DNA of 64,000 bases from NCBI RefSeq assembly GCF_030028105.1, contig NC_092379.1, positions 18,370,742 through 18,434,741 of the forward strand, read 5' to 3'. The position numbers and the translations under genes were made by a program. Under the pieces are notes generated by a model. The model searched no databases, was not told where the DNA came from, and saw only the letters and a program-made list of their open reading frames with translations. Each line of letters starts with the position of its first letter. The first letter of the stretch is position 1. Of the stretch, positions 2,711 to 64,000 are shown piece after piece. Origin of the DNA: Mobula birostris (taxonomy: Eukaryota).

Positions 2711-2828
2711 GTAGAAAAGTTGGGATGTTACGTGTCAGTTGTACATGTTGGTGAGTCCATTTTGTTATATTGTGTTCAGTTTTGGTCACTCTGCGATAGG
2801 AAAGATATCAGTAAGCTGGGAAGACTGT

Positions 2829-3585
2829 AGAATCAGAATCAGGGTTATTATCACCGGAATGTGACGTGAAATTTGTTAACCTAGCAGCAGCAATTCAATG
2901 CAATACATAATCTAGAATAAAAGATAGTAATAAATACACAAGTAAATCAGTTACAGAATACGTGTATTGAATAGATGAAAAAACGCGCAAAAAACAGAAA
3001 TACTTTATATTTAAAAAGTGAGGTAGTGTCCAAGGATTCAATGGCCATTTAGGAATCGGATGGCAGAGGGGAAGAAGCTGTTCCTGAATCGCTGAGTGTG
3101 TGCCTTCAGGCTTCTGTACCTCCTACTTGATGGTAATGGTGAGAAAAGGGCATGCCCTGGGTGCTGGAGGTTCTTAATGATGAACACTGCCTTTCTGAGA
3201 CACCGCTCCCTGAAGATGTCCTGGGTACTTTGAAGGCTAGTACCCAAGATGGAGCTGACTAGATTTATAACTTCCTGTAGTTTCTTTCGGTCCTGTGCAG
3301 TAGCCCCTCCATACCAGACAGTGATGCAGCCTGTCAGAAACCTCTCCACTGTACAGCTATAGAAGTTTTTGAGTGTACTTGTTGCCATGCCACTTCTCAA
3401 ACTCCTAATGAAGTATAGCTGCTATCTTGCTTTCTTTATAACTACATCGATATGTTGGGACCAGGTTAGATCCTCCGAAATCTTGACACCCAGGAACTTG
3501 AAACTGTTCACTCTCTCCACTTCTGATCCCTCTATGAAGATTGGTATGTCTTCCTTTGTCTTGCCCTTCCTGAATGACTTGAGGG
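2829..3585 (-). mobile_element. L2-clade LINE 3' fragment
   Basis: ORF 3038-3400 (NFYSCTVE..LTGCITVWYG...RFRNSFFPSAIRFLN) is a typical L2 ORF2 C-terminus, with an (ATTCTG)n-type tail near 2830. Confidence 0.75.
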
Positions 3586-3599
3586 ACTGAGTTCTGGAA

Positions 3600-3960
3600 T
3601 GAGGTTGCTAATTTATTCCTTGGAGCATGAGGGTTAATCATATAAAATCATGAGGGGCACAAGCAGGGTGAATGCACACAGTGCTTTTACCCCCTAGGGG
3701 TGGGGAATCAAGAACTGGCGGGCACAGGTTTAAAGTGAGAGGGGAAAGATTTAATAGGAACCTGAGGGGCAACCTTTTCACCCAGAAGGCGGTCAGAATA
3801 TGGAATGAGCTGCCGTACGAAGTGGTTGAGCCAGATAAATTAACAAGTATGAGTGTGTGGGAAGGTTTAGAGAGATAAGATAGGGGCAAGTGGAATAACT
3901 TATGGGTAATCTTGTTCAGTACAGAACAATTGGGCCGAGGGGCCTATCTCCATTCTGTGT
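3600..3960 (+). mobile_element. CR1 LINE 3' fragment
   Basis: GHRFKVRGERFNRNLRGNLFTQKAVRIWNELP is the CR1 ORF2 C-terminal signature. Confidence 0.8.
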
Positions 3961-4329
3961 GACACTTTACAGTGGGAGTGCAAAGCAGACAGCCACTAAG
4001 ATACTAGGACCACAGCAAGGTAATTTGTGAGGTCAAGAGTTCACCTTATTGTATCAGGGGACTGCTGAAGTGTATTATAACAGCAAGGTAGAAGCTGTCC
4101 CTGAGCCCGGTGGTGTGCGCTTTCCGGCTTAATATCTTCTGCCCGACAGCTGTCTAGGATGAATAGGGTCTTTAATTATGCTGACTACTTTCCCAAGAAA
4201 CCCATACTAGACGAATCTGCTAATTTTTTTTGAAGAGGTAACCAAAAGGGTAGATCAGGGTGGGGCAGTGGATGTTGTTTATTTCGGACTTTCAACAAGG
4301 TCTCAAAGGGTAGGCTGGTCTGCAAGGTT

Positions 4330-4905
4330 ATGTCCCATGGAATCCGAGGAGAACTAGTTAGATGGATTCAAAACCGGAGGAACTCAGCAGGCCAGGCAGA
4401 CTCTATCAAAAAGAGTAAACAGTCGATGTTTCTGGCCGAGACCCTTCATCGGGACTGGAAAGGAAGAAGTCAAAATAAGAAGGTGGGGGAGGGGAGGAAG
4501 GAGTACAAGGTGGGTAGGTGAAACTTATGGGAAGGAAAGAGCTGGGAAATTGGTGAAAGATCAAAGGGCTGGAGGAGGCAGAATCTAATAGGTGAAGGTA
4601 GGAGACGGTGGAAGAAAGGGAAGGGGAGGAGCACTAGAGGGAGGTGATGGACAGGTAAAAAGAGGTGTGAAAGGGAAACAAGAATGGGGAATGGAGAAGA
4701 TGGGGGGGGAGGGCAATTACTGGAAGTTCGAGAAATCGATGTTTATGCCATCAGTTTGGAGGCTACCCAGATGGAATATAAGGTCTTGTTCCTCCAGCCT
4801 GAGTGTGGCCTCATTGCGGTAGTAGAGGAGACTGTGGACTGACATGTCGGAATGGGAACGGGAAGTGGAATTGAAATGAGTGGCTACAGGAAGGCCCCAC
4901 CTTTT
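4330..4905 (-). mobile_element. Penelope-like element fragment
   Basis: Reverse-complement homologue of 2330-2710, with a degenerate hammerhead motif at ~4420-4457. Confidence 0.65.
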
Positions 4906-5409
4906 CTGGTGCAGATGCCAGATGAATTTAAAGTTGTCTCGGACGTAGGGTGTTGGTGTAAAGTTGTTCCTTAGAATTAAAGCCGGTAACTAACTAGTGG
5001 TGTTCTGCAAAGATTGGTGTTATTTAATTTGGATGCAAATGCACAAGTTGTGGTCAATAAGTTTGTAGATGACACAAAATTAGGAAATGTTGTTTGTAGT
5101 GAAGAAGATTGTCATGGATTACAGGGGGATTGAACAGTTAGAGAAGTGGGCTCAGGAATAGTAAATATATTTCAATTCGGATTAGTGTGAGGACATGTAT
5201 TTTGGAAAATCAGACTAGCGGAGGACTTGTACTATGAATGGTAGTGCACTAAGGAGTGCATTACAACTGAACCACCTAGGAGTACGACTGCATGGTTTGT
5301 TGTCACAGGGTAGTGAAAAAGGTGTTCAACCCATGCTGTCCTTCATCAGTCAGGGCACTGAGTACCGGAGTTCAGAAATTATGTACCAGGTGTGCAAATT
5401 GCTTAGGCT

Positions 5410-6876
5410 GAACGGAGTAAAGACCATTAGATTCAGGAGCAGAATTAGGCCATTTGGCCCATCAACTCTGCTCCGCCATTTCATCATGGCTGATCCAGTT
5501 TTCCTCTCAGCCCCAATCTCATGCCTTCTCCACGTATCCCTTCATGCCTTGACCAATCACGAATCTATCAACCTTTGCCTTACTTAAACATAAAGACTTG
5601 GCCTCCATAGCCATCTGTGGCAAGTAATTCCACAGATTCACCGCCTTTGGCTAAAGAAATTCCTCATCTCTGTACTAAAAGGACGCCCTTCTACTCTAAA
5701 GCTGTGTTCTTTGGTCTTAGACCCTCCCACCATAGGAAGTATCTTCTCCGCATCCACTATTATCAAGGTCATTTACCAATCCATTGGTGTCACAGAGGTC
5801 ATCCCTCATTCTTCTGAATTTTAGTGAATTCAGGCCCAAGACCATCAGATGCACTTCATATAACAACCCATTCAATCCTGGAATCATTTTCGTGAATCTC
5901 TTTTTAACCCTTTCCAGTTTCAGCACATCCTTTCTAAGATAAGGGGGCCCAAACCTGCTCACAATCCTCCAAGTATGGCCTCACCACTGCTTTATAAAGT
6001 TTCAACATTACATTGTTTATTTTATATTGTAGTCCTCTTGAAATGAATGCTATTATATTGCATTTGCCTTCCTCACTACAGAATCAATGTGCAAATTAAC
6101 CTTCAGGGAATCTTGCCCAAGGACTCCCAAGTCCCTTTTGTGCCTCGGAGTTTTGTATTTTCTCTGCATTTAGAAAATAGTCAGCCCTTTCATTTTTTTC
6201 TACCAAAGTACATGACCATATACTTCCCGACACTATGCCGCCTGCCATTTCTTTGCCCATTCTCCTGTCTTAAATCCTTCCGTAGCCTCTATAGTTTTGC
6301 AAAACTACCTGACCCTCCAGCTATCTGCATGTCGTCTGCAAACTTTGTGACCGAGCCATCAATTCCATCATACAAATTTATTGACATTAAAGGTAAAAGA
6401 ATCAGTCCCAACACAGATCTCTGTGGAACACCAGTAGTCACTGGCAGCCAACCAGAAAGGCTTCCTTTCTTCCCACTCTTTGCTTCCTGCCAGTCAGCCA
6501 CTGCTTTATCCATGCTGGAATTGTTCCTGTAATACCATGGGCTCATAGCTTGTTAAGTAGCCTAATGTATGGCACCTTGTCAAAGGCCTTCTGAAAATTC
6601 AAGTACACAACGTGAACCAATTCTCTTTTTTCTATCCTGCTTGTTACTTCTTCAAAGAATTCCAATGGATTTATCAGACAACTTTCTCTTGAGGAAACTA
6701 TGCTGACTACGGCCTATTTTATCATGTGCTTCTAAGTACCCTGAGACCCATCTTTAAAAATCAACTCCAACATCTTCCCAACCACTGAGGTCAGATTAAC
6801 TGGCCTGTAGTTTCCTTTTTTCCGTCTATCTCCCTTCTTGAAGAGTGGAGTGACACTTGCAATTTTTCATAACCTT
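5410..6876 (-). mobile_element. CR1 LINE, 5'-truncated and degraded
   Basis: Minus-strand RT fragments (LPVTTGVPQRSVLG, KFADD, PYLRKDVLKLERV) and a CR1 3' tail near 5420. Confidence 0.85.
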
Positions 6877-6884
6877 CTCTAGAG

Positions 6885-7145
6885 CAGTGGTCCTCAACCT
6901 CCAGACCACAGGCCGATACATTGCCGTGAAGAATGCAGTAGCGCAGCGGTAGTCAGAACGCACCCAGCATATCTTTAAGAAGAAAGCCGAAATAAACAAA
7001 CTAATTAATAGTGGCACCTAATTAATTAGCTTGTTTATTTCAACTTTCTTCTTAAAGATGTGCTGGGTGCGTTCTGACTACCGCTGCACCACTGCATTCT
7101 TCGCAGCCATGTCTCGGCCCGTGGTCCGGAGGTTGGGGACCTCTT
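6885..7145. mobile_element. hAT (Charlie-like) fold-back MITE
   Basis: Arms are near-perfect inverted repeats (CAGTGGTCCTCAACCTCC... / ...GGAGGTTGGGGACCTCT). 8-bp TSD CTCTAGAG at 6877-6884 and 7146-7153. Confidence 0.9.
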
Positions 7146-7284
7146 CTCTAGAGAAATGTGTAGTTTTGGTCATGCTGTTATAAGAATCAGAGTCAGGTTT
7201 ATTATCACTGGCATGTGTCATGAAATTTGTTAACTTAGAGAGGTGTGGTTAAACTGGAAATAGTACAGGAAAGATTTATGAGGA

Positions 7285-7510
7285 ATCAGGCACAAAATGC
7301 TGGAGGAACTCAGCAGGCCAGGCAGCATCTATGGAAATAAATAAACCATCAACGTTTTGGGCCGAGACCCTTCTTCAGTCCTGATGAAGGGTCTCGGCTT
7401 GAAGCATCAACTGTTTACTCTATTCCATAGATGCTGCCTGACTTGCTGAATTCCTGTAGTATCTAGTGTGTGTTGTGGTGGATTTCCAGCATTTGTAGAT
7501 TTTCTCATGT
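7285..7510. mobile_element. Penelope-derived palindromic terminal repeat
   Basis: Head-to-head copies of GCAGCATCT...GGGCCGAGACCCTTC and CTGATGAAGGGTCTCGG...AGATGCTGCC. Confidence 0.65.
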
Positions 7511-7900
7511 TTGAGATTTATGAGGAAGTTGCCTGGATTAGAGGACCTGAGTTATGGGGGGAGATTGGTCAGGCGAGGTCTTTAGTCCTTTGAGTGCAAG
7601 AGAATGCAGGGTGACCTTGTAGAAGTGTTTAGAATTATGAGAGGTGTAGATAAAGTGGATGGTAACAGTCTCTTCCCCCCAGGGTAGGGGAGTCCAAGCC
7701 CAGTGGGCAGAAGTTTAGAGTAGGAGGTAGAAGATTTAAAAGGAAACTGAGGGGCAACCTTTTCCACACAGAGGGTGTTAGGTATATGGAATGAGTTGCC
7801 AGAGATTGTCGTTGAGTTGAGGCAGAGTCAATAGTATAATTGCAGAAGCACTTGGAGGGGTGCATGGAGGAGAGGGCTTGAAGGGGTATGGGCCAAACTT
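7510..7900 (+). mobile_element. CR1 LINE 3' fragment
   Basis: Same C-terminal CR1 signature as 3600-3960, degraded. Confidence 0.7.
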
Positions 7901-8424
7901 AGGAAATTTAGACACCATGGTTGGCACTCACTGGTTGGGCATGGAGTCCATTCCATGCAGGGGAGGCTGGTGATCTGTTGAGCTGTGTCCAGTTTCTTGC
8001 AGTCACCACCAAGCCGTGCTGCATCCAGATAGATGTTTCCTATCTCTGAAGAAATTCGTGCAGGTCAGGAGGGATAGCCCTCCAAGGAAGCAGGGAAGTG
8101 TTGAGAATGGCTGGAATCGGGCTGAGAGACAGGGAATGGTTAAGGTTGTCTGTGGGTCGGTTTGGGGCCAATTGTTTACAGAGATCAGAGACAGGTTGGG
8201 TGTGTGAGATGGGGAGGAGGGGTGAGGGTGAGAGAGCTGGGGTCAGGTAGGTACAGAGGCAGGGTCAAGGTCAGCATCGGGGTGTGGAGTCAGGGGTCAG
8301 AGATGAGGGGAGTAAGGATGAAGGGGAAAGGGTAGGGGTTGGTGGTGGTGAGGTTAGGGATGAGTAGCCCTGGCAGGGACCTCCAACTGACCATTGCTTC
8401 TCTCCTCCACCCTCCCTACCTCAG

Positions 8425-8645
8425 CCTCAAGTGGCCTGAACAAGTTGCTGCCGGCAGACTCCCCGGGTCGGAGACACTCAGCTGAAGGCGACTTCCGCCT
8501 CCGACCCTCCTTCTTCAGCTCGCCGGCTCCAGAAGGTGCTGGCAGTTTCTTCAGCTTCTCTCCTGGTGACGACCAGGACCGGGAGCAGCATCAGCACCCC
8601 ACCCTCGCCGCAACCAGCAGCTCCTTCAGAATGAAGAGGATGTGA
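8425..8645 (+). CDS. CCNB1IP1: HEI10 coding exon 3 (disordered C-terminus, stop)
   Basis: Acceptor cctcag|CC completes a GCC codon in phase 1. DFRLRPSFF...SFFSFSP...FRMKRM* matches the remembered human tail DFQFRPFF...SFFSFVSP...FKVKRI*. Total CDS 828 nt = 275 aa plus stop. Confidence 0.92.
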
Positions 8646-10895: not shown

Positions 10896-11235
10896 GGCCT
10901 TGGGTAACAAGACTACACCCTCCACCCCGTAACCAAGGCCACACCAGATCCAGTTACCACATACCCCTCTTCCCAGTATCCAAGGCCACACCTCCCTCAG
11001 TAACTATATCCCCATCTCTCCTGCTATTCAAGGGTCCACTCTCTCTGGTGACTGAGGACCCGAGTAACCAAGTCCACATTTGCCCTTGTAATAAAGCTCC
11101 ATTCAAAGCCCTGCCTGTCCCTGGTAACCAGGCCCCAACTCTCCTGGTAACTTGACCCGCTTGAACTGTGGTAACTGGGATCCATTCTCCAGACCTGCCC
11201 AGTGGTCCCCCACACTCCCCAGACCTTGTACTTAC

Positions 11236-11450
11236 AAGGGCACTTTGTCATCGGTTGTGAGGCTGAAGACCACCTTGCCCAGTACCACCAACCCAGGGTT
11301 GGGCCCGGGGCGGAGAGCAGAGAGGGGCCGCAGGCTAAGGGAGAGCGGCTGCCCACTCGGGCTGGAGTAGGAACGGCCCTGGTGCTGTGACAGCTCCCGG
11401 TTCACCAGTCTGGACACCATGGCATTCAGTCTCTTTGTCTTCAGCTTCCC
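11236..11450 (-). CDS. TTC5: TTC5 exon 8
   Basis: ttccag|GGG AAG gives GKLKTKRL...VVLGKVVFSLTTDDKVP, then TT|gtaagt. 215 nt. Confidence 0.95.
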
Positions 11451-11559
11451 CTGGAACCAGAGAGGAGGCAGAGTACACTCACACCACAGGCTCATCTGTC
11501 CTCATGAACAGTCCTAGGACACGGTCCCACTCAAGGGCACCCAAGAACCGACGGCTATT

Positions 11560-12335
11560 GTCATAGTCATACTTTATTGATCCCGAGAGAAATTGGTTTT
11601 CGTTACAGTTGCACCATAAATAGTTAAATAGTAATATGTAAATTATGCCAGTAAATTATGAAATAAGTCCAGGACCAGCCTATTGTCTCAGGGTGTCTGA
11701 CCCTCCAAGGGAGGAGTGGTAAAGTTTGATGGCCACAGGCAGGAATGACTTCCTATGACGCTCTGTGCTGTATCTCGGTGGAATGAGTCTCTGGCTGAAT
11801 GTACTCCTGTGCCCACCCAGTACATTATGTAGTGGATGGGAGACATTGACCAAGATGACATGCAACTTAGACAGCATCCTCTTTTCAGACACCACAGTGA
11901 GAGAGTCCAGTTCCATCCCCACAACATCACTGGCCTTACGAATGAGTTTGTTGATTCTGTTGGTATCTGCTACCCTCAGCCTGCTGCCCCAGCACACAAC
12001 AGCAAACATGATAGCACTGGCCACCACAGACTCGTAGAACATCCTCAGCATCGTCCAGCAGATGTTAAAGGACCTCAGACTCCTCAGGAAATAGAGACGG
12101 CTCTGACCCTTCTTGTAGACAGCCTCATTGTTCTTTGACCAGTCCAGTTTATTGTCAATTCGTATCCCCAGGTATTTGTAATCCTCCACCATGTCCACAC
12201 TGACCCCCTGGATGGAAACAGGGGTCACCGGTACCTTAGCTCTCCTCAGGTCTACCACCAGCTCCTTAGTCTTTTTCACATTAAGCTCCAGATAATTCTG
12301 CTCACACCATGTGACAAAGTTTGGGACCTGGGTGA
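11560..12335 (-). mobile_element. L2-clade LINE 3' portion in TTC5 intron 7 (sense to TTC5)
   Basis: ORF 11680-12414 (LELNVKKTKELVVDLRR...YKYLGI..DNKLDW...RLYFLR.LRSF) with an AATAAA-(TATGAC)n tail at ~11560-11580. Confidence 0.88.
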
Positions 12336-12430
12336 ATGCAAACCACCCCCTGCACCATTGACTGTGGCCCTCCCCACTCCCATGAGTCAGTCTCCCCCAC
12401 CCAGCTTCCCACATTCTGCCCCCTCTTCAC

Positions 12431-12577
12431 CTTTTGCTGCACCATGGTGCTGACCCGGTCCAGGAAGGAGAGCAGCTGCTGATGGCGGTGCGAAGCCTCT
12501 GAGGAGGCAGGGTCAAGGGCAGCAGCCCGAGCAAATCCTTCCAGCGCCGTTTGGTACCTCTCCTCATACCTGTGAAG
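12431..12577 (-). CDS. TTC5: TTC5 exon 7
   Basis: acccag|CTT gives LHRYEERYQTALEGFARAAALDP...LLSFLDRVSTMVQQK, then |gtgaag. 147 nt. Confidence 0.94.
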
Positions 12578-12950
12578 CTGGGTGTTTTGAGGGAACAGGG
12601 GTCAGGGATTAAAGCAGAAGCAGGAGTCTGCCCGCACCTTCCGCTGCCCTCAGACTCTCTGTCTGCTCAGGAGTCCCATTGCCCACCCCACTCATCCCAA
12701 CCTCTGCCATCCCTCCCTGCAATCCGCCTCTGTGCCCCCATCCCATCCTCTCCGGCATATCCCAAGCATTAGTGTGCCCCACCTCCAGCCTCTTGGGGTC
12801 CGCCCTCTCAGCAATCCCTCAAACACCCTCAACTCCATCACATTCACTGAGAGCCATCCTCACCCTCCCCGGGCAAGTCCCAATGATTCAGGAGCCCTTC
12901 TCAGTGAACTTTTATATCCACCCACCAGAGATGGGTGGGGGTGAACTCAC

Positions 12951-13007
12951 CGTGGACCTGTTGAAGTGGAGGTCTGGGTTGTTGTGGGAGGCTGTGTCAA
13001 CCTTCTC
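12951..13007 (-). CDS. TTC5: TTC5 exon 6
   Basis: ctccag|GAG gives EKVDTASHNNPDLHFNRST, then |gtgagt. 57 nt. Confidence 0.93.
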
Positions 13008-13596
13008 CTGGAGAGGGGGAGAGACAATGGTCAGGTCACGCTGTCTTCTCCCACCCTCCCAACAAACACCACCCTTACATCACAGGCCCTTCTCTAGAAT
13101 ATCACCCTCTTCCCCTCAACTGACCCAACACCTCACTCAATCCCATCACCAGAGCTTACTTCTCCAGCCTTCTGAAGCCAGTGCCCGATCCTGTTACCCC
13201 CGACCCAGTCACTCATCCCATCTCCAACCCCAACCCAGCCCCAACCTCTTAACCCAGTCACCTGACTTCCAACACCTTGAACTCTGACTCTGAGCATCAT
13301 TCTCCAATCATGTCACCGCGATCTCCCTCTTGTCACCCCAAACCTTCCCCTAACCCCCTGAACCCTGTCCTCAACCCCAACACCCCCATGACCTCCTACA
13401 ATCCCATCTGACTGACCTCCCGTTCCAAACCAGCCCCTGAACCCATCATCCCACCCAACCCCAAACCTCCAATCTTGCCCCAGCCCCTTCACTCCCGAAC
13501 ACCCTTTGACACCCCCCCCATTGCACCTGCAACCGCCCATCCCACAACTCAGTCACACCAATGGCCCTACCACACCCCCATCCTGGTGATACTCAC

Positions 13597-13688
13597 CGCC
13601 TGAGCGTAGGCACCCAGTGCCTGCTGACTGACCCGCTCACTCTGCCCAGTGAGGAAGAATAGTGACAGGTAGGCATTGCCCAGGATGT
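13597..13688 (-). CDS. TTC5: TTC5 exon 5
   Basis: caaacag|AC gives (Y)[30 protein letters not shown], then |gtgagt. 92 nt. Confidence 0.94.
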
Positions 13689-13966
13689 CTGTTTGGGGGG
13701 AAAGAGAGACGTTACTGCAGCTGAGCATGGTGGGTGGGTGGAGGGGGACAGGGGTTAACATCCTCACAGCTGGTCACGGGAGAAACTGGCATCCCCTTCC
13801 TCTCTACCCTCCCCCACCAACCCCTCTATGGGGCTCCTTCACTACTTTTCCTCCCACCCATGGCAATCCTTCCCTTCTCTCCTCCCTTCCACAATGCTCC
13901 CTTACTGCCCCCTTCTCCCATGGTGCTCCCAACCCCCCTCCCCCCCGGCAGCCAGGTCACACTCAC

Positions 13967-14114
13967 ACCAGGAGGTTCCGTCGGTGACATCCATCTGCAC
14001 CGCCACCTTCGCCTGCTCCACGCTGGCCAGGACATTCTTGGTGCTGTCCTCCCCCTGAGCCGGCAGCTGCCTCAGGACCATCGACAGGTTCCGCAGAGAC
14101 ACCTTGTTCTTGCA
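13967..14114 (-). CDS. TTC5: TTC5 exon 4
   Basis: ccacag|TGC gives CKNKVSLRNLSMVLRQL...AKVAVQMDVTDGTSW, then T|gtgagt. 148 nt. Confidence 0.95.
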
Positions 14115-14534
14115 CTGTGGGGTGGGGGTGGGACATGCCAGGTGGAGCCACAGTAAATATGGACCCCTCCCAAATCCCTCCCCCCCCACCTTTGCTCTAA
14201 CCCACTGTACCCATCCCTCATAAATCTCGTTCTATCACACACCCTGCCAGAACCGCCTTCAGCAGCCCTCCTCTCCCACCAAGGTCAGGATGGGATGCAG
14301 CACAGCACCAACAGGAAGCCCATTACCCCCACATATATAGTTCATGAGAAGGTTGAGCGCATCCAGGAGGCCAGTTCACTCCGCAGGGAGGTTGCAAGAC
14401 CTGTCAAGCAGTGAGATTGATTCCACGTGGCCAGGCGGGCTTCCTCTCTGGTCAGGATATCTCACCCAGTTCCCAGAACATGGGACGGACAGTACACAGA
14501 GGAGCACGGTTTCCCAACACTTGGCCCATATCAG

Positions 14535-15110
14535 ACCATAAGACATAGGAGCAGAATTAGGCCATTTGGCCTTTTAGTCTGCTCCGCAATTCGATCATGG
14601 CTGATTTATTTTCCCTTTCGAACCCCATTCTCCTGCCTTCTCCCTGTAACTTTTCACACCCTCACAGATTAAGTACTTTTCAACCTCTGCTTTAATTATT
14701 CCCAATAACTTGGCCTCCATAGCCATCTGTGGCAATGAATTACACAGATTCACCACCATCTGGCTAAAGAAATTTCTTCTCATCTCAGTTCTAAATGGAC
14801 GTATTCTAAGGCTGTGTCATCTGGTCCTAGTCTCCCACAACTGGAACCATCCTCTCCAGGTTTACTCTATTCAAGACTTCCAGTATTCAGTAAGTTTCAA
14901 TAAGATCCCCTGTCACTCCTGAACAGTGAGTACAAACCCAGAGCCACCAAACTCTCCTCACACATTAACCCCAACATTCCCAGAATCATTCTCGTGAACC
15001 TCCTCTGGACCTTGTCCAATGCTAGAACACGTTTTTTTCCCAGAGAACTGGCACAAAACTGCTCACAATATTCCAAATATTGTCTGACCAATGCCTCTAA
15101 ACTCACAATC
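14535..15110 (-). mobile_element. CR1 LINE 3' fragment
   Basis: RRNFFSQMVVNLCNSLP signature and a CR1 3' tail at ~14535. Confidence 0.8.
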
Positions 15111-15125
15111 CTTGTACTTTCCACA

Positions 15126-16440
15126 TCTATCCCTATATTACTAAAACTCTCATGCTCTGTTTGTCTGTTTGTGATCACCAATTAGTGCAAACGATGCATT
15201 ACAGCTGCACTATTTTTGGCTAAGTCGACTTAAAATGCGCTAACTTACAGGCATACAGGCAAAATTCAGGATTATATATTCGTATAAAATTGCTCAATTG
15301 CCAAAATCAACAGCCCTGCTTTCACCCGAGAGCCAATGTCAGCCATGATGGAAACCGCAATGTGACACCATGATGCATGCGCACAGCCACCCTCAGAAGT
15401 GACTCACGATGCTCACAGCATTGACACCAACTGGAGCAAAAGGGCAGGGCAGCTTGATTTCGAGCGCTCACATTCTGCTAATCACCATCAGCATGTGCAG
15501 GATTGGGACAGATCAAACTGAGACCCTTCAATAAGAGTTGATTAAATCTTATCGTAATGATGTACTTCGAGACTCCCATCAAACCCTTTGCTGAAGTCAA
15601 AGGACAGCAGTGACTATATCATGTCCATTTAGGAGAGCGCCAACTACATCATCAAGAATAATCAGCATCCTGGAGGCTTTGGTGTTACTGCTTCGTATCT
15701 TCTATCCAGCATTAGGGTAAAAAAAAATATGGTCAGCCTAATTATGCAGCGTGGAAAGAGGAGGGGGACATTGTGGTCAAGAGATAACTCCAAACATGGT
15801 TGGGAAGCAGCAAGGAGAGGGAGAGAACAAGAATCGGATGAGGCCAGGGCCGCACGACTCCAGGATCAAAGAGGACAAAAAAGATGAGAGAAGAAGAGAC
15901 AGAGGAGGAGAGGCATGCACGTCTCCAAAATCACAACTGTCATAGAGGAGGAGAGAGGAAGAGACAAAGGAGCTGAGAAATGCACGTCTCCAGGATCAGA
16001 CACAAACAATAAACAGCAGAAGAGATGGGGGATGAAAGGGCTGCACGTCTCCAGAATGACAAAAACAGGCACAGGAGGAGAGAGGAAGAGACAAGAGAGC
16101 AGAGAAATGCACGTCTCCAAGATCAAAGACAAACAACAAACAGCAGAAGAGATGAAGAGATGGCAGATGAAAGGACTGCACGTCTCCAGAATGACAACAA
16201 GAAGCAGAAGGGTGGCAGATCAATCAGAAATGATGCCATCAAAAGTGTCACTAAACGAGGAGGAGCTATATTTGCCTTGCTACGCGTCATTCTTCTTTAA
16301 TAAACTGAGGTTTTCTTCTTCAATTTCCAAAGCAAAGCAATACCAGTAGCATTCAGGAAAATTTAATGTTCATTCTGGTCACATCAGACTGCACTACCCT
16401 TCTCTCAAATGGTGCCCCAACGGGTCACCCCGTTGTCTAG
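15126..16440 (+). mobile_element. Non-autonomous Helitron in TTC5 intron 3
   Basis: A|TC 5' end (TCTATCCCTATATTACTAAAACTCTC). 3' hairpin CAACGGG-TCAC-CCCGTTG (16418-16435), then TCTAG|T. Internal repeats translate as ETREQRNARLQDQR-type units. Confidence 0.85.
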
Positions 16441-17209
16441 TAACTTCTTAAATGTAACTGAAGTAGCTGTCTCAATCACTTCCTATGGCAACTACTTCCC
16501 ACCTCTGTGTAAAAACAAACTTGTCCTTAAAGCAATGCTCACCAGTTATTGATTTCCAACTCTGGGGGAAAAAAAGACTACTCACCCTATCCAAGCCCAC
16601 CACCCCATGATTTTATACATCTCAAGGAGATCCCCAAGTTACCTACGCTCCCAGGAGGAAACCCTACCTGTCTAATCTCTCTCGAGTCCCGACAACATTC
16701 TTGTAAATCTTGTTCTGCACACTTTTCAGTTTAATCATGCCCTTCTTCTCAATACAGTTTTGTTAGAGGATGGAATTAAACTACTAGACGCTGTGTGAGC
16801 TGCCCCCCCACCCCACTCCATCCTCAGTCATCTTCCCCAGCCCAGCACATCCCCCCCAGCTCCCTCCCCTGGTCTCCTTAGGCCGACACAATAACTACTG
16901 CTTGCCATCAGGAAGGAGGTACAGGAGCTTCGAGAACCTCACCACCAGATCCAGGAACAGTTATTACTCTCAACCATCACACTTTTGAACCAGAGGGGAT
17001 AACTTCACTTGTCTTGTCACTGAACTGTTCCCACAACCTATGGATTCACTTTCAAGGACTCATCATGTTCTTGATGTTTATTGCATTGCTTGTTATTATT
17101 TTGTATTTGCAGTTTGTTAACTTTTGCACATCGGTTGTTTGTCCGTTTTGTTGGGTGCAGTCTTTCATTGATTCTAATTTGTTTTCTTTTGTATGCCCGC
17201 AAGAAAATG

Positions 17210-17850
17210 AATCTGAGCGCCTTTACTTCCTCAGAAAACTAAAGAAATTTGGCCTGTCCCCTAAAACCCTCACTAATTTTTATAGATGCACCGAAGAAAG
17301 CATTCTTCTAGGGTGCATCACAACCTGGTATGGAAGTTGTCCTGTCCAAGACTGAAAGAAGCTGCAGAAGATTGTGAACACGGCACAGCACATCACACAA
17401 ACCAATCTTCCGTCCGTGGACTCACTTTACACCGCATGCTGTTGGAGCAGTGCTCCCAGGATAATCAAGGACACAACCCACCCAGCCAATGCACTTTTCG
17501 TCCCTCTTCCCCCCAGAGAAGGCTCAGGAGTTTGAAGACTTGTACGGCCAGATTTGGGAAGAGCTTCTTTCCGACTGTGATAAGACTGCTGAACGGATCC
17601 TGACCCTGAATTGGGCCGTACCCTCCAAATATCCAGACCTGCTTCTCATTTTTTTTGCACTACCTTACTATCTATTTTTCTATTTTCTTTTATGATTTAT
17701 AATTTAAAATTTTAATATTTACTAATTTAAACTACTTTTAATATCTTTAATATTTGTAATTCAGGGAGCGGGAAGTGCAGAATCAAATATCGCTGTGATG
17801 ATTGTACGTTTTAGTACCAATTGTTTGGCGACAATAAAGTATAAAGTATA
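17210..17850 (+). mobile_element. L2-clade LINE 3' fragment
   Basis: RLYFLRKLKKFGLSPKTLTNFYRCTEESILLGCITTWYG...SFFPTVIRLLN, with an AATAAAGTAT tail. Confidence 0.85.
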
Positions 17851-17985
17851 TTGTGACACATGTACTTCAATAATAATTTTACTTTGAACTCCTAACCCTC
17901 TCGATCTCCCGACCACCCCCTCCACCCCTTCCCCTCACTCCATTTTCCCTCTGCCACCCCCGATCTTCACCCCTCACCCTCTAAC

Positions 17986-18197
17986 CTGGTTGAGGGCCCC
18001 AGAGAAGCAGGTATGGGCGGCAGACAGGTCCCCCTTCTTCCAGTACACCTCTCCCAGCTGGTTCCAGGCCTCGATCAGCCCCGGCTCTAGTTTGACAGCC
18101 CGTGAGAGCAGCTGCTCAGCCCGTGGGCTGTACTCAGGCATTATATTGAGCGCCCGGCCCTCCAGCACCAACAGGTGAGCCTTCCGCTGGGGGCATC
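17986..18197 (-). CDS. TTC5: TTC5 exon 3 (TPR)
   Basis: cccacag|GA gives (G)[17 protein letters not shown]...[24 protein letters not shown]...FSGALNQ, then |gttaga. 212 nt. Confidence 0.96.
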
Positions 18198-18807
18198 CTG
18201 TGGGAGGGATGAGAGCGTCAGTGATGGGGAGAAATGGGTATGCAGCATTGACAGTGGGGCACCGGTGATTGGGGGGGAGGGGCCAGTGACTGAGACAGGT
18301 GGGGAGGGGGGGGCGAGAGCCATTTGCTCATAGTATCAGCAATAGTCAACAACCAAGTGGAGCAGGGGCAAAATCGGTGGGGAGAGAGGATTAAGGATGA
18401 GGAGGGGGATGCATAATAACGGGAGGGTTAAGGATTGGTTCCTGCATAAGGATTAGATGGGGGGGGGGGTTCCTGGGCAACATCCCCTCTCATTTTTTTT
18501 CACAGCTGCGCAGACCAACCATTGCTCTGATCAGGAAACTTTTACATGGTCAAAAAAAATTGTGTGGCAACGAAGGCTATACGTGGGAACATTTCAGTTA
18601 CTGGGCGGCTGTGCATTTGTGCAGCTTAGAACAGTAACCCTAGGAGAGGAGAGGGATACGGTGTTGGTGCCTGGGAGGAGGGGATGAGGGCTTGAGGGTT
18701 TTCTCAAAGGGTGTGACAGGAGAGGACAGGGTAAAAGAGGGTATTAGGAGGGTGCACCTGGGGAGGGTTTGATGGAGGTTGGAGGAAGTTTCTTGGACTC
18801 TCCCTAC

Positions 18808-18940
18808 CCTCTAATTCCTGTAGGGCCTCCAGAGTTGCCTGCATGCGCTCCTCCAGATCTCGCTGCCTATTTCCAGCCTCCTCCATGCCATGAGTCTCGA
18901 AGTAGAGGTCCCGGAATGTGTAAAGCTCATCCACCAGCTC
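18808..18940 (-). CDS. TTC5: TTC5 exon 2
   Basis: acacag|GAG gives ELVDELYTFRDLYFETHGMEEAG...LQELE, then G|gtaggg. 133 nt. Confidence 0.95.
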
Positions 18941-19633
18941 CTGTGTGTGTATGGGGGGGTGGGGGAAGAAAGCTGGAGTTACACCTCACACCCTGAACCC
19001 ACTCTACAAGTGGACACCCCAGCAATACCTCTATATCCCCCCCCTCCTCTTCCCAGGAGGGTCCTCATCCGACCCCACCCTTTCTCCCTGTCACTATATA
19101 ACCCCACCCCCATCCCCTCATCCCTCCCGGGACATCCAAACCCTCCGCCCCTACTCCACCCTCCCCTTCCAGCAGATTCTTCCATCTCCGTCTCCTTGGA
19201 CCCCCCTCAACCCCCCCTCCCTATCATGGGAATACCCGGACAGTCCCCACCCCGGGGATCCTAGATCTCTTCTGTCGGCTGACGCCCCATCCAGCCTGAC
19301 CACATTCCCCATCCCCATCAGGAAACGGAGTAGGACTCCACTCCACAACAACCGTAACAGGCAGATATCTCTCCCCACTTCCCGGTCACACACTCCACCT
19401 CGGGGAGATTGTGTCTCTCTACCCAGGGAGACTTCGACACCCCGAGGAACCCCCCGCCCCCCGAACAACCTTCGCGCAGATATCCCACTTTCTCTTCTGA
19501 CTCCCTAATAACCCTTGTCCCCGGATTCCACTAGCCCCTTCCTGCTTCTCCGACAATGGGTCCCCCAGATACTCCCCCTGTATCCAGACTCCCCGTTGCC
19601 AGGGCTACATTCCCACCCCCCACCCCAGGATAC

Positions 19634-43200: not shown

Positions 43201-43230
43201 TCCAGCACCTATTTTCTATGTTTCTATGTT
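40220..43230 (+). mobile_element. Nested CR1 with near-complete ORF2 (APE endonuclease + RT), disrupted
   Basis: ORF 40344-41720 (NARSI, GITETW, MGDFN, SDH) followed by RT fragments with stops and frameshifts, and a (TATGTTTC)n tail. Confidence 0.92.
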
Positions 43231-58100: not shown

Positions 58101-58302
58101 CACTCTCCATCACAAACTACACCTCCATCCCCTGCTCCCCATTCCCATGCCTTAATCCTGCCTTCCTCTCCCCTCCTGTATACCCCCTCCAGTGTCACAT
58201 ATCCTGCCATTTTCCCAATGTATCATCCACTGCTGTCCCTCTGCCCACTGAACCGGCTCTGTGCCCCCATTTCCCATCTGGTATCCCCGGTACATTTAGA
58301 GG

Positions 58303-58445
58303 TTTATTTCCTGAAATGAGCAGTTGCAGTGCAGTAGCCTCAGATTGCCGAGTGAGTGAGATGGAGACTCCATTTCCAAACATCGCAGCCACAGGGGGAT
58401 TTCTTCATTGAACGTGGGGCGTGTGTCTGCTGGTCACTGCTGAGC
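58303..58445 (-). CDS. Candidate TM2/terminal exon of the Ig-like gene (AQQ*, 3' UTR, AATAAA)
   Basis: Acceptor ctcctgtctatatttcag|GCT CAG CAG TGA (58445-58434) fits the phase-0 donor of TM1. AATAAA on the minus strand at 58308-58303. Confidence 0.5.
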
Positions 58446-58639
58446 CTGAAATATAGACAGGAGAGTATGATATAGTACGTGACAAGGTGCAGCACAGAGG
58501 TTAACCTGTGAGAACAGGTGAACTAAATAACAGACGGTCTGTCCTCATTCGAGGAGATGAAGCCCCATGAAGAGGTGTCTGTCAGTATTCCCCGAGGTCA
58601 CCCCAAAACACGAATCTGAGTATCAGTTCAGACCTTTAG

Positions 58640-60600
58640 TGTGATCCATAGTTGGGCTAAAGTTTTATGTCCTGAGTAAGACCATAAGATAAGATATAGG
58701 AGCAGAACCGCCCCCATCTTTAATTATCGACTGCAACATTTTATTGCCAACCACCGAGGTCAGGCTAACTGGGCTAGAATTTCCTTTTGTCTGCCTCTCT
58801 CCCTTCTTGAAGAATGGCGTGACAATTACAATTTTCCAGTCCTTCAGAACTGTACCAGAATCTAGTGATTCTTGAAAGATCATTACTAACGCCTTCATAA
58901 TCTCTTCAGCCACCTCTTTCAGAATCCTGGAGTGTAGACCATCTGATCCAGGTGACTTATCTACCTTCAGACCTTTCAGTTTCCAAAGCACCTTTTCCCT
59001 GGTAATAACATCTTCACTCACTTCTTCCCCCTGACACTCTTGAACTTCCGTCATACTGCCAGTGCCTTCCCCAGTGTAGTCTGATGCAAAGTGCTTATTC
59101 ATTTCCTTGTCCCTCATTACTACCTCTCCAGCATCATTTTCCAGCACTCCAAAATCTCCTCTCACCTCTCTTTTACACTTTATGTATCTGAAGAAACTTT
59201 TGGTATCCTCTTTAATATTATTGGCTATCTTACCTTTGTATTCCTTCTTTTTCTTTCTGACTTTATTTAGTTGTCTTCTGTTGTTTTTTAAAAGCTTCCC
59301 AATTCTCTAACTTCCCACTAATTTTTGCTCTATTATATGCCCGTTGTTTGGCTTTTATGTTGGCTTTCACTTCTCTTGTCAGCCACGGTGTCTCATCCTG
59401 CATTTTGAATACTTCTTCTTCTTTGGGATGTGCCTTCTGAATTACTCCCAGAAACTCCAGCCATTGCTGCTCTGCTGTTATCCCTGCCAGTGTCCCCTTC
59501 CAATCAATTTTGGGCAATTCCTCTCTCATGCCTCTGCATTTCCCTTTATTCCACTGTAATACTGATACATCTGACTCTAGCTTCTCCTTCTCCATTTGCA
59601 GAGTGAGTTATATCATATTATGATCACTGGACCCTAAGGGTTCCTTTAGCTTAAGCTCCGTAATCAATTCCAGTTCATTGCACAACACCCAATCCAGAAT
59701 AGCTAATCCCCTGATGTGCTCGACCATGACCTGCTTTAAAAAGCCATCTTGTAGGCATTGTACGAATTTCCACTCTTGAGATCCAGCACCAACTTGATAT
59801 TCCCAATCTACCTGCATATTGAGATTCTCCCATGACTATTGTAACATTGCCCTTTTGACATGCATTTTCTATCTCCTGTTGTAATTAGTAGACCAAGTAT
59901 TTGCCACTGTTCATTATAGGGTCTTTTTACCCTTGCAATTCCTTAATTCTACCCACAATGATTCTACACCTTCCGATCCTATGTCATCTCTTTCTATTGA
60001 TTTGATTTCATTTTTTACCAACAGAGCTAATCCACCCCCTCTACCTACCTGCCTGTCCTTTTGATGCAATGGGCATCCTTGGACGTTAAGCTCCCAGCTG
60101 TAATCTTCTTTCAGCCGTGATTCAGTGATGCCACAACATCATGCATTCCAATCTGTAGCTGTGCCACAAGTCCATCCACATTATTCCATATACTGTGTGC
60201 ATTGAAATGTTACACCTTCACTTTTGTATTCATCACCCTCTCCTATTTTGTCCTCCTTTTACATTGCAACTCATCCTGTTGACTGCATTTTAGTCCAATC
60301 ATCAGTCTCTGCTTGCTAGCAACCTCGCTACATACTGCCTTTGTTAGTAAACCAATGACTAGATCCTCTGCCCTATCACTCCATTTCCTATCCCCCTGTC
60401 AAATTAGTTTAAATGCACTCGAACGGCTCTAGCAAACCTGCCCACTTGATATTTGTCCCCCTAAGGTTCAGGTGTTATCTGTCCCTTTTATACAGGTCAC
60501 ACCTTCCCCAGAGGTGATCACAGTGATTCAGAAATCTGCCTCTGCCCCCTACACCAGTTCCTCAGCCACACATTCATCTGCCAAATCATCCTCTTCTGAC
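58640..60600 (-). mobile_element. CR1 LINE fragments (ORF1 end, endonuclease, linker) in the TM1-TM2 intron
   Basis: LGSSDHNMI, ETPWLTREVK and GLHSRILKEVA motifs. Confidence 0.8.
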
Positions 60601-60885
60601 CCTTACCCTGCTGTTCTCTCAATACAACTCTTGCTTGATTTCCTTGTTTAAGTTCACAATTGTTGCTCTAAATACCCTTTCACATTCTGCCACCTTCTGC
60701 TTATCAAGGCCCAGAGGCTCGGAGTAAAGAGGAAAGGTGTAAAGTCCCAGGGGTTGTGAAGGCCTCAGACTGCGTTGTCTGTTGATTGTGCTGTCGTTGG
60801 GATTGCAGTGTCAGAGAATGCAATGTGAGATAAGGAAGCTGAAAGTTTGTGTTTCATGGGATGTCTCTGTTAGTCAATTAGTTAC

Positions 60886-61028
60886 CTTGACAACGGTGAC
60901 GAAGGTGCTGTAGAGGAAACTGATGATGAACAGAACGGCAAAGGCAGCAACTGTAAGCACATTGTCATCTCCACCCACGTGTCCCTGTTCTTCCTTCCCC
61001 TCCTCTCCTGTCATGTCTGTGCAGGTTT
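60886..61028 (-). CDS. Immunoglobulin heavy-chain-type transmembrane exon TM1, intact (isotype uncertain; IgW-like by inference)
   Basis: ctcactttctcaattctttcag|AA gives (x)TCTDMTGEEGKEEQGHVGGDDNVLTVAAFAVLFIISFLYSTFVTVVK, then |gtaact. Phase 1 in, phase 0 out, acidic spacer, CART motif F..LF..S..YS..VT..K, and no charged TM residue, unlike a TCR chain. Confidence 0.85.
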
Positions 61029-62959: not shown

Positions 62960-63160
62960 AATGAGAAGGACTTGCAGGTAATCTTGCTTGTTTCAGTGAG
63001 GTAAACCACACTGTTGTAGGATCAACAATCAATTGAAGGTTGACAATTGGTGTTGTTGGCCACTCTGTCCATGGGAATCTCTGCTGCAGAGAACCCAGTG
63101 ACCCAACTTCTTTCCTTCTCATCTGGTGGGGAAGGGTAACTTCAGAGGGTTCCTATTGGG
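62960..63160 (-). pseudogene. Decayed Ig constant-domain exon (terminal CH-like)
   Basis: PSEVTL/PPDEKERS..VTGFSAAEI (63102-63076) resembles CH PSVYLLPP...CLVTGFSPADV. The Cys and Trp are lost, with a stop and a frameshift. Confidence 0.45.
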
Positions 63161-63349
63161 AATGGATTTTTTAATCATTTGTTGTTCACCTGGAATATTC
63201 TGCTCTTACTCCATCCAAGCCAATGTTTATACCACTAGCGATCTCACCGCATCTAAAATGTTAAGGCTTTTTACTTTTGGAAATGAAAGATAAATTGTGG
63301 AAAGTGTTCAGTGGGTTAGAAAACACTTGTGAACAGAGAAAGGGATAAC

Positions 63350-63568
63350 ATTGAGGTAGCATCACAAGTGTACTCTGTACCATTGCTTCAGCACTAGTTC
63401 TGTGCCTGGCTGAGTACTGTGCATCTCTCTGGTTGACTGGAACTCAACAACTGTCTGATGTCCAGTTACATTCCACAATGCCTGCTCCAGTGGAACTCAG
63501 TTCCTCCAGTTCTGCTGACAGATAGACTTGCTTCATGTCTCTGAGACGTTGGTGTGGAAACATTGACC
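63350..63568 (-). pseudogene. Decayed Ig constant-domain exon
   Basis: The phase-1 acceptor ctgcag| gives QVYLSAELEELSSTGAGIVEC (A/B strands), then QYSAR, and after a frameshift *SNGTEYTC (F strand, W-x-x-G-x-x-Y-x-C with TGG to TGA). Confidence 0.45.
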
Positions 63569-64000
63569 CTGCAGTCATTATTTCATCATTCCCTCACTGA
63601 CAAGGCCGGCATTCCTTGCTGTGCTCCAGCAGGTCCGTCACAGAGCAGTGAAGAGTTTGGTGTGGGACTGATGGATACGGGTAAACAGGGTAGGAAGGCC
63701 AGTGTCCTTCACCAAAGAACATCAGAGAAATAGTTTGTAATCTAAAACTAGAATCCGGCACAGTCACCTCCGGTTATGTGTTCACGCCATTGTCCTGAGG
63801 CTTGGGAACAGACTGTAGGTCAATGATCCTCGTGCTAGTACTGAGGGAGTGCTGCACTCTTGCACATCTGTCTGAGATGTGACAGAGGGGTCCAGATGGG
63901 TATTTACTGTTGGACAGACAGACCTTGTGTTGGTAGTTTAGAAGAGAGTTAAGTTTTGAAAGCATCGGATGAACTCTGCTTCTTTCCCACTCTCTGCCTC

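What the first reader, a model, noticed from the sequence alone, without database searches (positions are those of the whole stretch)
58303..61028. Intact IgH-type transmembrane exon hidden between repeats, next to TTC5 and HEI10
Seen: an open, correctly phased TM1 exon with the antigen-receptor TM motif, too short for the ORF track, plus a candidate TM2 giving the tail K-AQQ*. The TM lacks the W-(T/A)-TASTF start of IgM, and the spacer carries a Cys. Established: cartilaginous fish have many dispersed IgH miniclusters (IgM, IgW, IgNAR); human TTC5/CCNB1IP1 lie at 14q11.2 near TRA/TRD; IgH-TCR-delta linkage is known in sharks and amphibians. Inference: a divergent IgW-like or unassigned isotype marking ancestral IgH/TCR-alpha-delta synteny.
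Basis: partly seen in the sequence, partly recalled or inferred. Interest (0 to 1): 0.8.

Follow-up and report, generated by a model that had tools for sequence, protein, structure and literature searches.

The report
Ordinary IgW membrane-anchor exons in a ray
The short exon is real, and RNA shows it spliced on both sides, but it is simply the standard membrane anchor of the ray's IgW (IgD-like) antibody gene, and its position near TTC5/HEI10 fits an antibody/T-cell-receptor linkage already published in 2025.

Summary
Observation confirmed. On the minus strand, a 143-nt exon (61028..60886; AG acceptor, GT donor, phase 1 in, phase 0 out) encodes an acidic spacer plus a 24-residue membrane helix. 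It is spliced to a second exon starting at 58445 (A-Q-Q-stop), with AATAAA at 58308-58303.

RNA-type runs show exon depth 100-300 times intron depth, the exact TM1-TM2 junction, and TM1's acceptor joined to an exon ending ...IKKQVKNVQ that lies outside the window.

Interpretation partly supported. The isotype is neither divergent nor unassigned: it is canonical elasmobranch IgW.
- Identity over TM1+TM2 is 47/50 to Mobula birostris IgW gene models with the same AQQ tail, 36-41/50 to stingray, sawfish and shark IgW membrane forms, and 17/37 to human IgM.
- The spacer Cys is present in all three ray genera sampled and absent in the sharks sampled.

TTC5 (minus strand, 11.2-19.0 kb) and CCNB1IP1/HEI10 (plus strand, 0.3-8.6 kb) are confirmed. 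IgH linkage to TCR alpha/delta on the human chromosome 14 paralogon in sharks and a stingray was published by Flajnik et al. 2025.

The scan had already noted IgW TM1 exons at other clusters of this genome (about 160 kb and 4.2 Mb away). Whether this cluster makes a full heavy chain cannot be judged from the window. Low novelty.

The parts
60886..61028 (-). IgW TM1 exon: acidic extracellular spacer with one Cys, then a 24-residue membrane helix ending in K. Phase 1 at the acceptor, phase 0 at the donor.
   Evidence: Sequence and splice signals. HMMER hits to IgW C-termini, E 7e-19. PDB membrane IgM alignments ending at or within two residues of the M1 end. RNA depth 12844/8039 against about 43 in intron at 100% identity. 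Loose ends at 61030-61031 show the acceptor joined to ...IKKQVKNVQ.
58446..60885 (-). TM1-TM2 intron, 2,440 nt, GT..AG, filled with decayed LINE fragments in the gene's orientation.
   Evidence: Junction contigs skip exactly this stretch. RT- and endonuclease-like ORFs at 58665-59165, 59263-59595 and 59914-60069. blastn matches to other LINE copies in the window.
58434..58445 (-). TM2 coding part: Ala-Gln-Gln-stop. The cytoplasmic tail is therefore K-A-Q-Q.
   Evidence: The same AQQ C-terminus occurs in the Mobula birostris and M. hypostoma IgW models P0001, P0016 and P0021.
58285..58433 (-). 3'UTR of the membrane mRNA, with AATAAA at 58308-58303. The 3' end is approximate.
   Evidence: Depth 12000-13000 over 58211-58430 and 0 over 58101-58210 at 100% identity. 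At 95% identity there is a drop of roughly 50-fold into 58001-58200.
62979..63574 (-). Weak, colinear remnants of a C5-like and a C6-like (secretory-type) IgW constant exon pair, with stops and frameshifts, inside the intron upstream of TM1.
   Evidence: Permissive tblastn with IgW proteins: 63574-63500, 63420-63358, 63102-63049 and 63053-62979, E 0.05-1.2 in a 3-kb target, in gene order on the same strand. Six-frame reading. RNA depth is at intron level.
11235..18985 (-). TTC5 exons found: 18707-18985, 17977-18327, 13905-14189, 13570-13773 and 11235-11501. The 5' end of the gene faces the IgW gene.
   Evidence: PDB TTC5 hits: E 3.5e-14, 2.3e-12 for human residues 16-63, 9.3e-18 for residues 278-352. 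Exon scan.
282..8642 (+). CCNB1IP1 (HEI10) coding exons: 282-581, 948-1265 and 8364-8642.
   Evidence: 99% identity to Hypanus sabinus CCNB1IP1, E 1e-60, with 302 named homologues. tblastn exon map. Pfam zf-RING_5.

Best explanation
These are the two membrane exons (TM1 and TM2, plus 3'UTR and poly(A) signal) at the 3' end of an IgW heavy-chain minicluster of a devil/manta ray (genus Mobula, by the closest hits). IgW is the cartilaginous-fish orthologue of IgD. The V, D, J and constant exons lie upstream on the minus strand, beyond position 64000.

How it works:
- When the upstream secretory poly(A) sites are bypassed, the TM1 acceptor at 61028 is joined to the normal 3' end of a C4-type constant exon (shown in RNA here). 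In other gene models it is joined to a C2-type exon.
- TM1 is then joined to TM2 (shown).
- The product is a surface IgW chain: an acidic spacer, a 24-residue helix with the conserved polar face S..YST..T, and a four-residue cytoplasmic tail K-A-Q-Q.
- A tail that short cannot signal by itself, so signalling is inferred to go through CD79 alpha/beta, as in the solved IgM receptor. This step is inference, not shown here.

The cluster is the IgW unit nearest to TTC5 and CCNB1IP1. This fits the published antigen-receptor complex on the human chromosome 14 paralogon.
For: Anatomy: splice signals and phases are identical to IgM M1/M2.

RNA evidence:
- The TM1-TM2 junction is present, and exon depth is 100-300 times intron depth at 100% identity.
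- The acceptor is joined to ...IKKQVKNVQ, in two synonymous variants. This is the end of the repeated C4-type domain in the Mobula IgW models P0001, P0021 and P0027.

Identity:
- Only three hits in 1.84 billion proteins. They are Mobula birostris XP_072126131 (94%, same AQQ end), Hemitrygon 'pancreatic IgW...-like' and Pristis 'igW transmembrane form...-like'.
- The constant domains of these models hit curated IgW/IgNARC heavy chains at E about 1e-145.
- Isoform P0004 aligns end to end with Triakis IgW, including the secretory tail.
- Shark four-domain IgW Tm forms (Mustelus P0170; P0174) carry the same TM.
- Identity is 36-47/50 to IgW against 17/37 to human IgM.

Literature: shark IgW has membrane forms with two and four C domains made by alternative splicing (PMC5192425).

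Locus-specific expression: a contig carrying the window-specific letter at 60974 (Gly18) has depth 182 against 12.7 in intron in X2. In X1 about 1410 of 9346 depth carries it.
Against: The upstream V and C exons are outside the window and were not seen by me, so physical membership of an IgW cluster rests on RNA junctions and on unchecked scan notes.

Most TM1 RNA depth carries paralogue or allele letters (Asp18, Ile31), so this copy is a minor contributor. X3 and X4 show no window-type letter at 60974.

The window copy has two unique spacer substitutions. One of them (Gly18) falls at a position that is Asp or Glu in all 10 relatives.

The runs are only guessed to be RNA, and X2 is flagged 'probably DNA', though its exon contigs are 12-27 times deeper than its intron contig.

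A scan note says CH1 of this cluster is disrupted. I did not check this.
Confidence: 0.93

Rival explanations
1. Relic exon. The TM1/TM2 pair belongs to a dying IgW cluster and no longer contributes to a functional receptor. The spliced RNA seen comes from near-identical paralogous clusters or from sterile transcripts.
For: 85% (X1) to 100% (X3, X4) of depth at 60974 carries the paralogue or allele letter. Gly18 replaces an otherwise invariant acidic residue, and Met5 is also unique. Decayed C5/C6-like exons lie just upstream. An unchecked scan note reports a SINE and a stop in this cluster's CH1.
Against: The frame, both splice sites, the TM core and the poly(A) signal are all intact. An exact-match contig that includes the window-specific Gly18 letter is 14 times deeper than intron in X2, and the window letter has about 1410 depth in X1 against 43-105 in intron. 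Met5 is the letter seen in all laid contigs (no variant listed at 61014).
Confidence: 0.05
2. A membrane exon of a different or unassigned isotype (IgM, IgNAR, the non-rearranging UrIg2, or a new class) that merely resembles IgW.
For: UrIg2 also lies in this gene complex, has many repeated C2/C3 domains and has TM exons (PMC12227049). RefSeq names the Mobula models 'uncharacterized' or 'titin-like'.
Against: The same gene that ends in this TM (P0001) has an isoform (P0004) colinear with curated shark IgW through C5, C6 and the secretory tail. Curated IgW/IgNARC proteins are among the hits. Shark V-C1-C4-TM IgW forms share 22/24 TM-core residues. IgM shares only 17/37. The UrIg2 TM is described as only 50% identical to IgM, with a Leu-Leu-Ile-Phe centre that is not present here. 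No UrIg2 or IgNAR TM sequence was available for a direct comparison.
Confidence: 0.02

Closest known systems
Elasmobranch IgW (IgD-orthologue) membrane forms, e.g. nurse shark IgW Tm with two or four C domains; gene models Mustelus asterias P0170 and Chiloscyllium punctatum P0029
   Same: The GEEGKEE acidic spacer, the helix ..TVAAFA(V/I)LFI(I/L)SFLYSTFVTVVK, a three-residue TM2 tail, and TM1 spliced to the end of a C4-type (or C2-type) exon while skipping the secretory C5-C6.
   Different: Rays have x-C-T-D at the start of TM1 (a membrane-proximal Cys) where sharks have PPD/PQD and no Cys. The Mobula tail is AQQ rather than VQQ. This copy also has Met5 and Gly18.
Mobula birostris RefSeq models XP_072126131 (P0001) and P0021; M. 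hypostoma 'titin-like' XP_062916197 (P0016)
   Same: 43-47 of 50 residues identical over TM1+TM2, with the same AQQ end. The C4-type exon end IKKQVKNVQ, seen joined to TM1 in the RNA, occurs in these models.
   Different: No database protein carries exactly this copy's TM1, so it is a paralogue, an allele or an unannotated copy. Those models are unnamed or misnamed in RefSeq.
Mammalian membrane IgM M1/M2 exons (PDB 7XQ8, 7XT6, 8E4C)
   Same: The exon phases, the position of the exon end after ...K, an acidic spacer, the F-x-V-L-F...S-x-x-Y-S-T-x-V-T pattern, and a tail of only a few residues.
   Different: 17/37 identity. IgM has the W-(T/A)-TASTF start and a KVK tail. In IgM, M1 splices into a cryptic donor inside CH4 (textbook knowledge), whereas here TM1 joins whole-exon ends.
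Antigen-receptor complex (IgM/IgW/IgNAR/UrIg2/TCR alpha-delta/PSMB5 linkage) of Flajnik et al. 2025, PMC12227049
   Same: An IgW minicluster lies beside genes whose human orthologues I recall as being at 14q11.2 (TTC5, CCNB1IP1; my knowledge). In the stingray Hypanus sabinus, CCNB1IP1 and TTC5 are likewise adjacent and convergent.
   Different: The paper uses PSMB5 as its marker and never mentions TTC5 or CCNB1IP1. Linkage to TCR alpha/delta in this genome was not tested by me.

Membership tests
IgH membrane exon pair (TM1/TM2) | TM1 exon entered in phase 1 and left in phase 0, followed by a tiny TM2 exon (2-4 codons plus stop) and a poly(A) signal | tested here: met
   143-nt exon with AG/GT signals. 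TM2 is AQQ-stop, with AATAAA at 58308-58303. The junction is seen in RNA contigs.
IgH membrane exon pair (TM1/TM2) | Acidic spacer, then a hydrophobic helix of about 25 residues with the conserved polar Y-S-T pattern of antigen-receptor TM segments | tested here: met
   The PDB phmmer top six hits are membrane IgM, aligned over the TM. S36, Y39, S40 and T41 are invariant in 11 sequences.
IgW (IgD orthologue) isotype | The TM sequence is closest to IgW Tm forms, not to IgM | tested here: met
   36-47/50 to ray and shark IgW Tm against 17/37 to human IgM. All the proteins found at E<=0.001 in the two searches are IgW-type.
IgW (IgD orthologue) isotype | Genes carrying this TM have IgW constant domains and the IgW secretory tail | tested here: met
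   The P0006/P0001 domains hit curated IgW/IgNARC proteins. P0004 aligns with Triakis IgW through C5-C6 and the tail. This was tested on the closest Mobula paralogue or orthologue, not on this locus.
IgW (IgD orthologue) isotype | In RNA, TM1 is spliced to an IgW constant exon | tested here: met
   Loose ends at 61030/61031 read ...IKKQVKNVQ, the end of the C4-type domain of the Mobula IgW models. The donor exon is not in the window.
IgW (IgD orthologue) isotype | Physical minicluster V-D-J-C1..C6 upstream on the same strand | not testable with these tools
   It lies beyond 64000. Only unchecked scan notes describe it. The look-up of encoding contigs returned no DNA for the related loci.
IgM isotype | W-(T/A)-TASTF start of the helix and a KVK tail | tested here: not met
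   The helix starts N-V-L-T-V-A-A-F-A and the tail is K-AQQ.
UrIg2 (non-rearranging antigen-receptor gene) | Germline-joined VJ, no RSS, and its own TM (about 50% identical to IgM, with a Leu-Leu-Ile-Phe centre) | tested here: inconclusive
   No UrIg2 sequence was available. Indirectly excluded, because the models that carry this TM are colinear with IgW and the described TM centre is absent.
Antigen-receptor complex on the human chromosome 14 paralogon | An IgH cluster adjacent to orthologues of human chromosome 14 genes | tested here: met
   TTC5 and CCNB1IP1 lie 39-58 kb from TM2. Their human location is from my own knowledge.
Antigen-receptor complex on the human chromosome 14 paralogon | TCR alpha/delta locus on the same chromosome, within a few Mb | not testable with these tools
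   Only unchecked scan notes place TCR alpha/delta V segments 5.9-8.2 Mb beyond the window.

The most novel reading that the evidence does not exclude
The IgW cluster nearest TTC5 may be crippled in its own CH1/V region, as an unchecked scan note says, yet keep pristine and expressed membrane exons. This could be because they are still used through recombination or switching between IgW clusters, or in V-less transcripts. In addition, the ray-wide membrane-proximal Cys in TM1 resembles the x-C-x-D-T start of the C5 exon. It could give ray surface IgW an inter-chain disulfide that shark surface IgW lacks.
Probability: 0.1. Interest if true: 0.45.

Novelty: new member of a known kind. Interest (0 to 1): 0.15.

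Why it matters
Mostly as annotation. It fixes the 3' end (TM1, TM2, poly(A) signal) of the IgW cluster that borders TTC5/CCNB1IP1 in a Mobula genome. It shows that RefSeq names such as 'titin-like', 'uncharacterized' and 'mu/gamma/epsilon heavy chain-like' conceal IgW genes. It also offers TTC5-CCNB1IP1 as an extra marker for the edge of the elasmobranch antigen-receptor complex. It opens no new question: IgW membrane forms and the IgH-TCR alpha/delta linkage are both already described.

Tried and rejected
- Pfam has no family for the TM peptide.
- The ESM Atlas search of the HEI10 exon returned only generic RING clusters. The name was settled instead.
- The look-up of encoding contigs gave no DNA for the Mobula, Hemitrygon or Hypanus loci and no record for the Pristis model. 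Exon-intron structure could therefore not be compared across species, and the region beyond 64000 could not be modelled from a relative.
- The upstream donor exons were searched for in the window and are absent.
- Standard tblastn (E<=1) with IgW proteins finds only TM1 in the window. Only a permissive search shows the decayed C5/C6-like traces.
- An IgM reading was rejected on sequence. A UrIg2 reading was rejected indirectly. A chance ORF was rejected on the RNA junctions and on conservation.
- The supplement of PMC12227049 is not held, and no paper links TTC5/CCNB1IP1 with TCR.
Full report
**1. What is in the sequence**

The feature is on the minus strand. After a pyrimidine-rich tract and AG (61030-61029), an exon runs from 61028 to 60886 and is followed by GTAACT. 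It is 143 nt: two bases that complete a codon begun upstream, then 47 open codons ending in AAG. It is therefore entered in phase 1 and left in phase 0, as the IgM M1 exon is.

The peptide has three parts. It starts with a short stretch containing one Cys. Next comes an acidic G-E-E-G-K-E-E spacer. It ends with a 24-residue hydrophobic segment, L-T-V-A-A-F-A-V-L-F-I-I-S-F-L-Y-S-T-F-V-T-V-V-K.

2,440 nt downstream, a strong acceptor (tatttcag) precedes GCT CAG CAG TGA, starting at 58445. AATAAA lies at 58308-58303. The intron holds decayed LINE reverse-transcriptase and endonuclease ORFs in the same orientation.

**2. Transcription and splicing**

Four runs of one study and one organism hold this stretch.

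- **Depth at 100% identity.** In X1, TM1 bins reach 12844 and 8039, and TM2 plus 3'UTR about 12000-13000. Unique intron sits at 33-54, and 58101-58210 is empty.
- **TM1-TM2 junction.** Contigs join 60886 directly to 58445 (minus-strand GT..AG). Depth is 2039 in X1 and 62 in X3.
- **TM1 acceptor.** Contigs that end at the acceptor continue into sequence absent from the window. It reads ...I-K-K-Q-V-K-N-V-Q, and its last base supplies the G of the split Glu codon. Two synonymous variants are seen.

So TM1 is used with both of its splice sites, and its partner exon lies beyond 64000.

There are caveats.

- The runs are only guessed to be RNA. X2 is flagged as probably DNA, although its exon contigs are 12-27 times deeper than its intron contig.
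- Depth is summed over near-identical paralogues.
- Most depth carries other letters at 60974 (Asp18 instead of Gly18) and at 60936 (Ile31 instead of Val31), as in other IgW copies.

Support specific to this locus comes from two observations. An exact contig at 60944-60994 that includes the window letter at 60974 has depth 182 against 12.7 in intron in X2. In X1 the window letter accounts for about 1410 of 9346 depth against 43-105 in intron. X3 and X4 show a different intron haplotype (an 11-nt deletion at 61093 and a 14-nt insertion at 61596) and no Gly18.

**3. Which isotype**

- **PDB.** A sequence search returns membrane IgM as its six best hits, each alignment ending at or within two residues of the ...TLFK end of M1. 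E-values are only 0.09-0.3, and identity to human IgM is 17/37.
- **Exhaustive HMMER.** A search of 1.84 billion proteins finds three hits:
  - Mobula birostris XP_072126131: 94% identical, ending in the same ...VVKAQQ.
  - A Hemitrygon akajei model named 'pancreatic IgW, short secretory form-like'.
  - A Pristis pectinata model named 'igW transmembrane form...-like'.
- **Constant domains.** The Mobula model's constant domains hit curated 'IgW heavy chain' (Carcharhinus plumbeus), 'immunoglobulin W heavy chain' (Triakis scyllium) and 'IgNARC' (nurse shark) at E about 1e-145.
- **Secretory isoform.** Another isoform of the same gene, P0004, aligns end to end with Triakis IgW through C5, C6 and the secretory tail.
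- **Shark membrane forms.** A second search with the TM part recovered shark IgW membrane forms, including V-C1-C4-TM chains of 597 and 607 residues.
- **Alignment.** In an 11-sequence alignment, 26 of 47 TM1 positions are invariant. The window differs from sharks at two conservative positions in the 24-residue core.
- **Upstream exon.** The end ...IKKQVKNVQ seen in the RNA is the end of the repeated C4-type domain in the Mobula IgW models.
- **Literature.** Shark IgW has membrane forms with two and four C domains made by alternative splicing (PMC5192425). P0002 is a C2-to-TM model, and the RNA here shows C4-type-to-TM.

The isotype is plain IgW, the IgD orthologue. The missing IgM-type start is the normal IgW version of the motif. 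The spacer Cys (x-C-T-D) is shared by Mobula, Hemitrygon and Pristis and is absent from the shark genera sampled (Chiloscyllium, Mustelus and one unnamed sequence). In this sample it is a ray trait, not a peculiarity of this locus. Unique to this copy are Met5 and Gly18. Gly18 sits at a position that is Asp or Glu in all ten relatives.

**4. Rival identities**

IgM fails its defining features, the TASTF start and the KVK tail.

UrIg2 needed a closer look. It is a non-rearranging gene with many repeated C2/C3 domains and TM exons in the same complex (PMC12227049). No UrIg2 sequence was at hand, so the exclusion is indirect: the models that carry this TM are colinear with IgW, and the described UrIg2 TM centre is absent here.

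A relic reading cannot be fully excluded. It would say the exon is intact but the cluster is dead, and that all spliced RNA comes from paralogues. I give it about 5%, because the window-specific letter is seen at exon-level depth.

**5. Surroundings**

- **CCNB1IP1/HEI10.** Coding exons lie at 282-581, 948-1265 and 8364-8642 on the plus strand. Identity is 99% to Hypanus sabinus CCNB1IP1.
- **TTC5.** Exons lie on the minus strand between 11235 and 18985. PDB TTC5 E-values are 3.5e-14, 2.3e-12 and 9.3e-18, covering human residues 16-63, 129-183 and 278-352.
- **Arrangement.** The two genes are convergent, as in the stingray Hypanus sabinus.
- **Spacer.** TTC5's 5' end faces the 3' end of the IgW gene across about 39 kb of LINE-rich DNA with an assembly gap.
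- **Remnants upstream of TM1.** A permissive search finds weak, colinear traces of a C5-like and a C6-like exon, with stops, at 63574-62979 on the minus strand. Depth there is at intron level.

**6. Comparison with what is known, and novelty**

IgW membrane exons are long known. RefSeq models of two Mobula species already contain near-identical TM ends, although they are unnamed or misnamed.

Linkage of IgM, IgW and IgNAR clusters to TCR alpha/delta on the human chromosome 14 paralogon was published for three sharks and a stingray in 2025 (PMC12227049). That paper does not use TTC5 or CCNB1IP1 as markers, and no indexed paper connects them with TCR. Their adjacency is therefore a small extra detail.

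Earlier notes of this scan (unchecked leads) describe several related features:
- an IgW constant region 5-24 kb beyond the window;
- a C-domain pair 127 nt beyond it;
- further IgW clusters with TM1 at about 160 kb and 4.2 Mb;
- TCR alpha/delta V segments 5.9-8.2 Mb away.

My own data agree with the IgW assignment and with the decayed C exons. They do not test the other notes.

**7. Verdict**

It is a routine part of a known gene type. Interest is low.

Noticed in passing
window 62979-63574 (-): Colinear, decayed C5-like and C6-like (secretory-type) IgW exon traces lie between the window end and TM1. This suggests the ancestral ...C5-C6-TM1-TM2 order survives here as pseudo-exons, while working secretory exons lie further upstream.
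   Followed up: partly
window 61029 (junction contig in run X1): One RNA contig joins ...N-S-G-T-T-F-S-C-V, from inside the secretory C6 exon, to TM1 out of frame, giving K-P-A-Q-T-stop. This is an unproductive use of a phase-0 GT inside C6 with the TM1 acceptor. Its depth is not given.
   Followed up: partly
window 61015-61026 (-) and proteins P0001, P0002, P0020, P0004: The ray TM1 exons start x-C-T-D-(L/M)-T-G. This resembles the start of the C5 exon (D-D-C-S-D-T in Mobula, D-E-C-L-D-T in shark). Shark TM1 has P-P-D with no Cys. Ray surface IgW may therefore keep a post-C4 Cys that shark surface IgW lacks.
   Followed up: partly
proteins P0016, P0019, P0022, P0032-P0043 (RefSeq names): IgW genes of rays and sharks are labelled 'titin-like', 'uncharacterized protein', or 'immunoglobulin mu/gamma-1/epsilon heavy chain-like' in RefSeq. 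Ray models have up to about 12 repeated C3/C4-type domains.
   Followed up: no
window 61093, 61578-61608, 60974: Runs X3 and X4 carry a different haplotype or copy of the intron upstream of TM1 (an 11-nt deletion, a 14-nt insertion and two substitutions) together with Asp18. X1 and X2 match the window.
   Followed up: no
window 35500-43600 (+): Two or three young LINE copies with long endonuclease and reverse-transcriptase ORFs (for example 458 aa at 40344-41720) fill much of the TTC5-IgW spacer. An N gap lies at about 53.1-53.3 kb.
   Followed up: no
window 282-18985; Hypanus sabinus locus of P0050: CCNB1IP1 (+) and TTC5 (-) are convergent neighbours both here and in the stingray, where an importin-like gene lies on the other side of CCNB1IP1.
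   Followed up: partly
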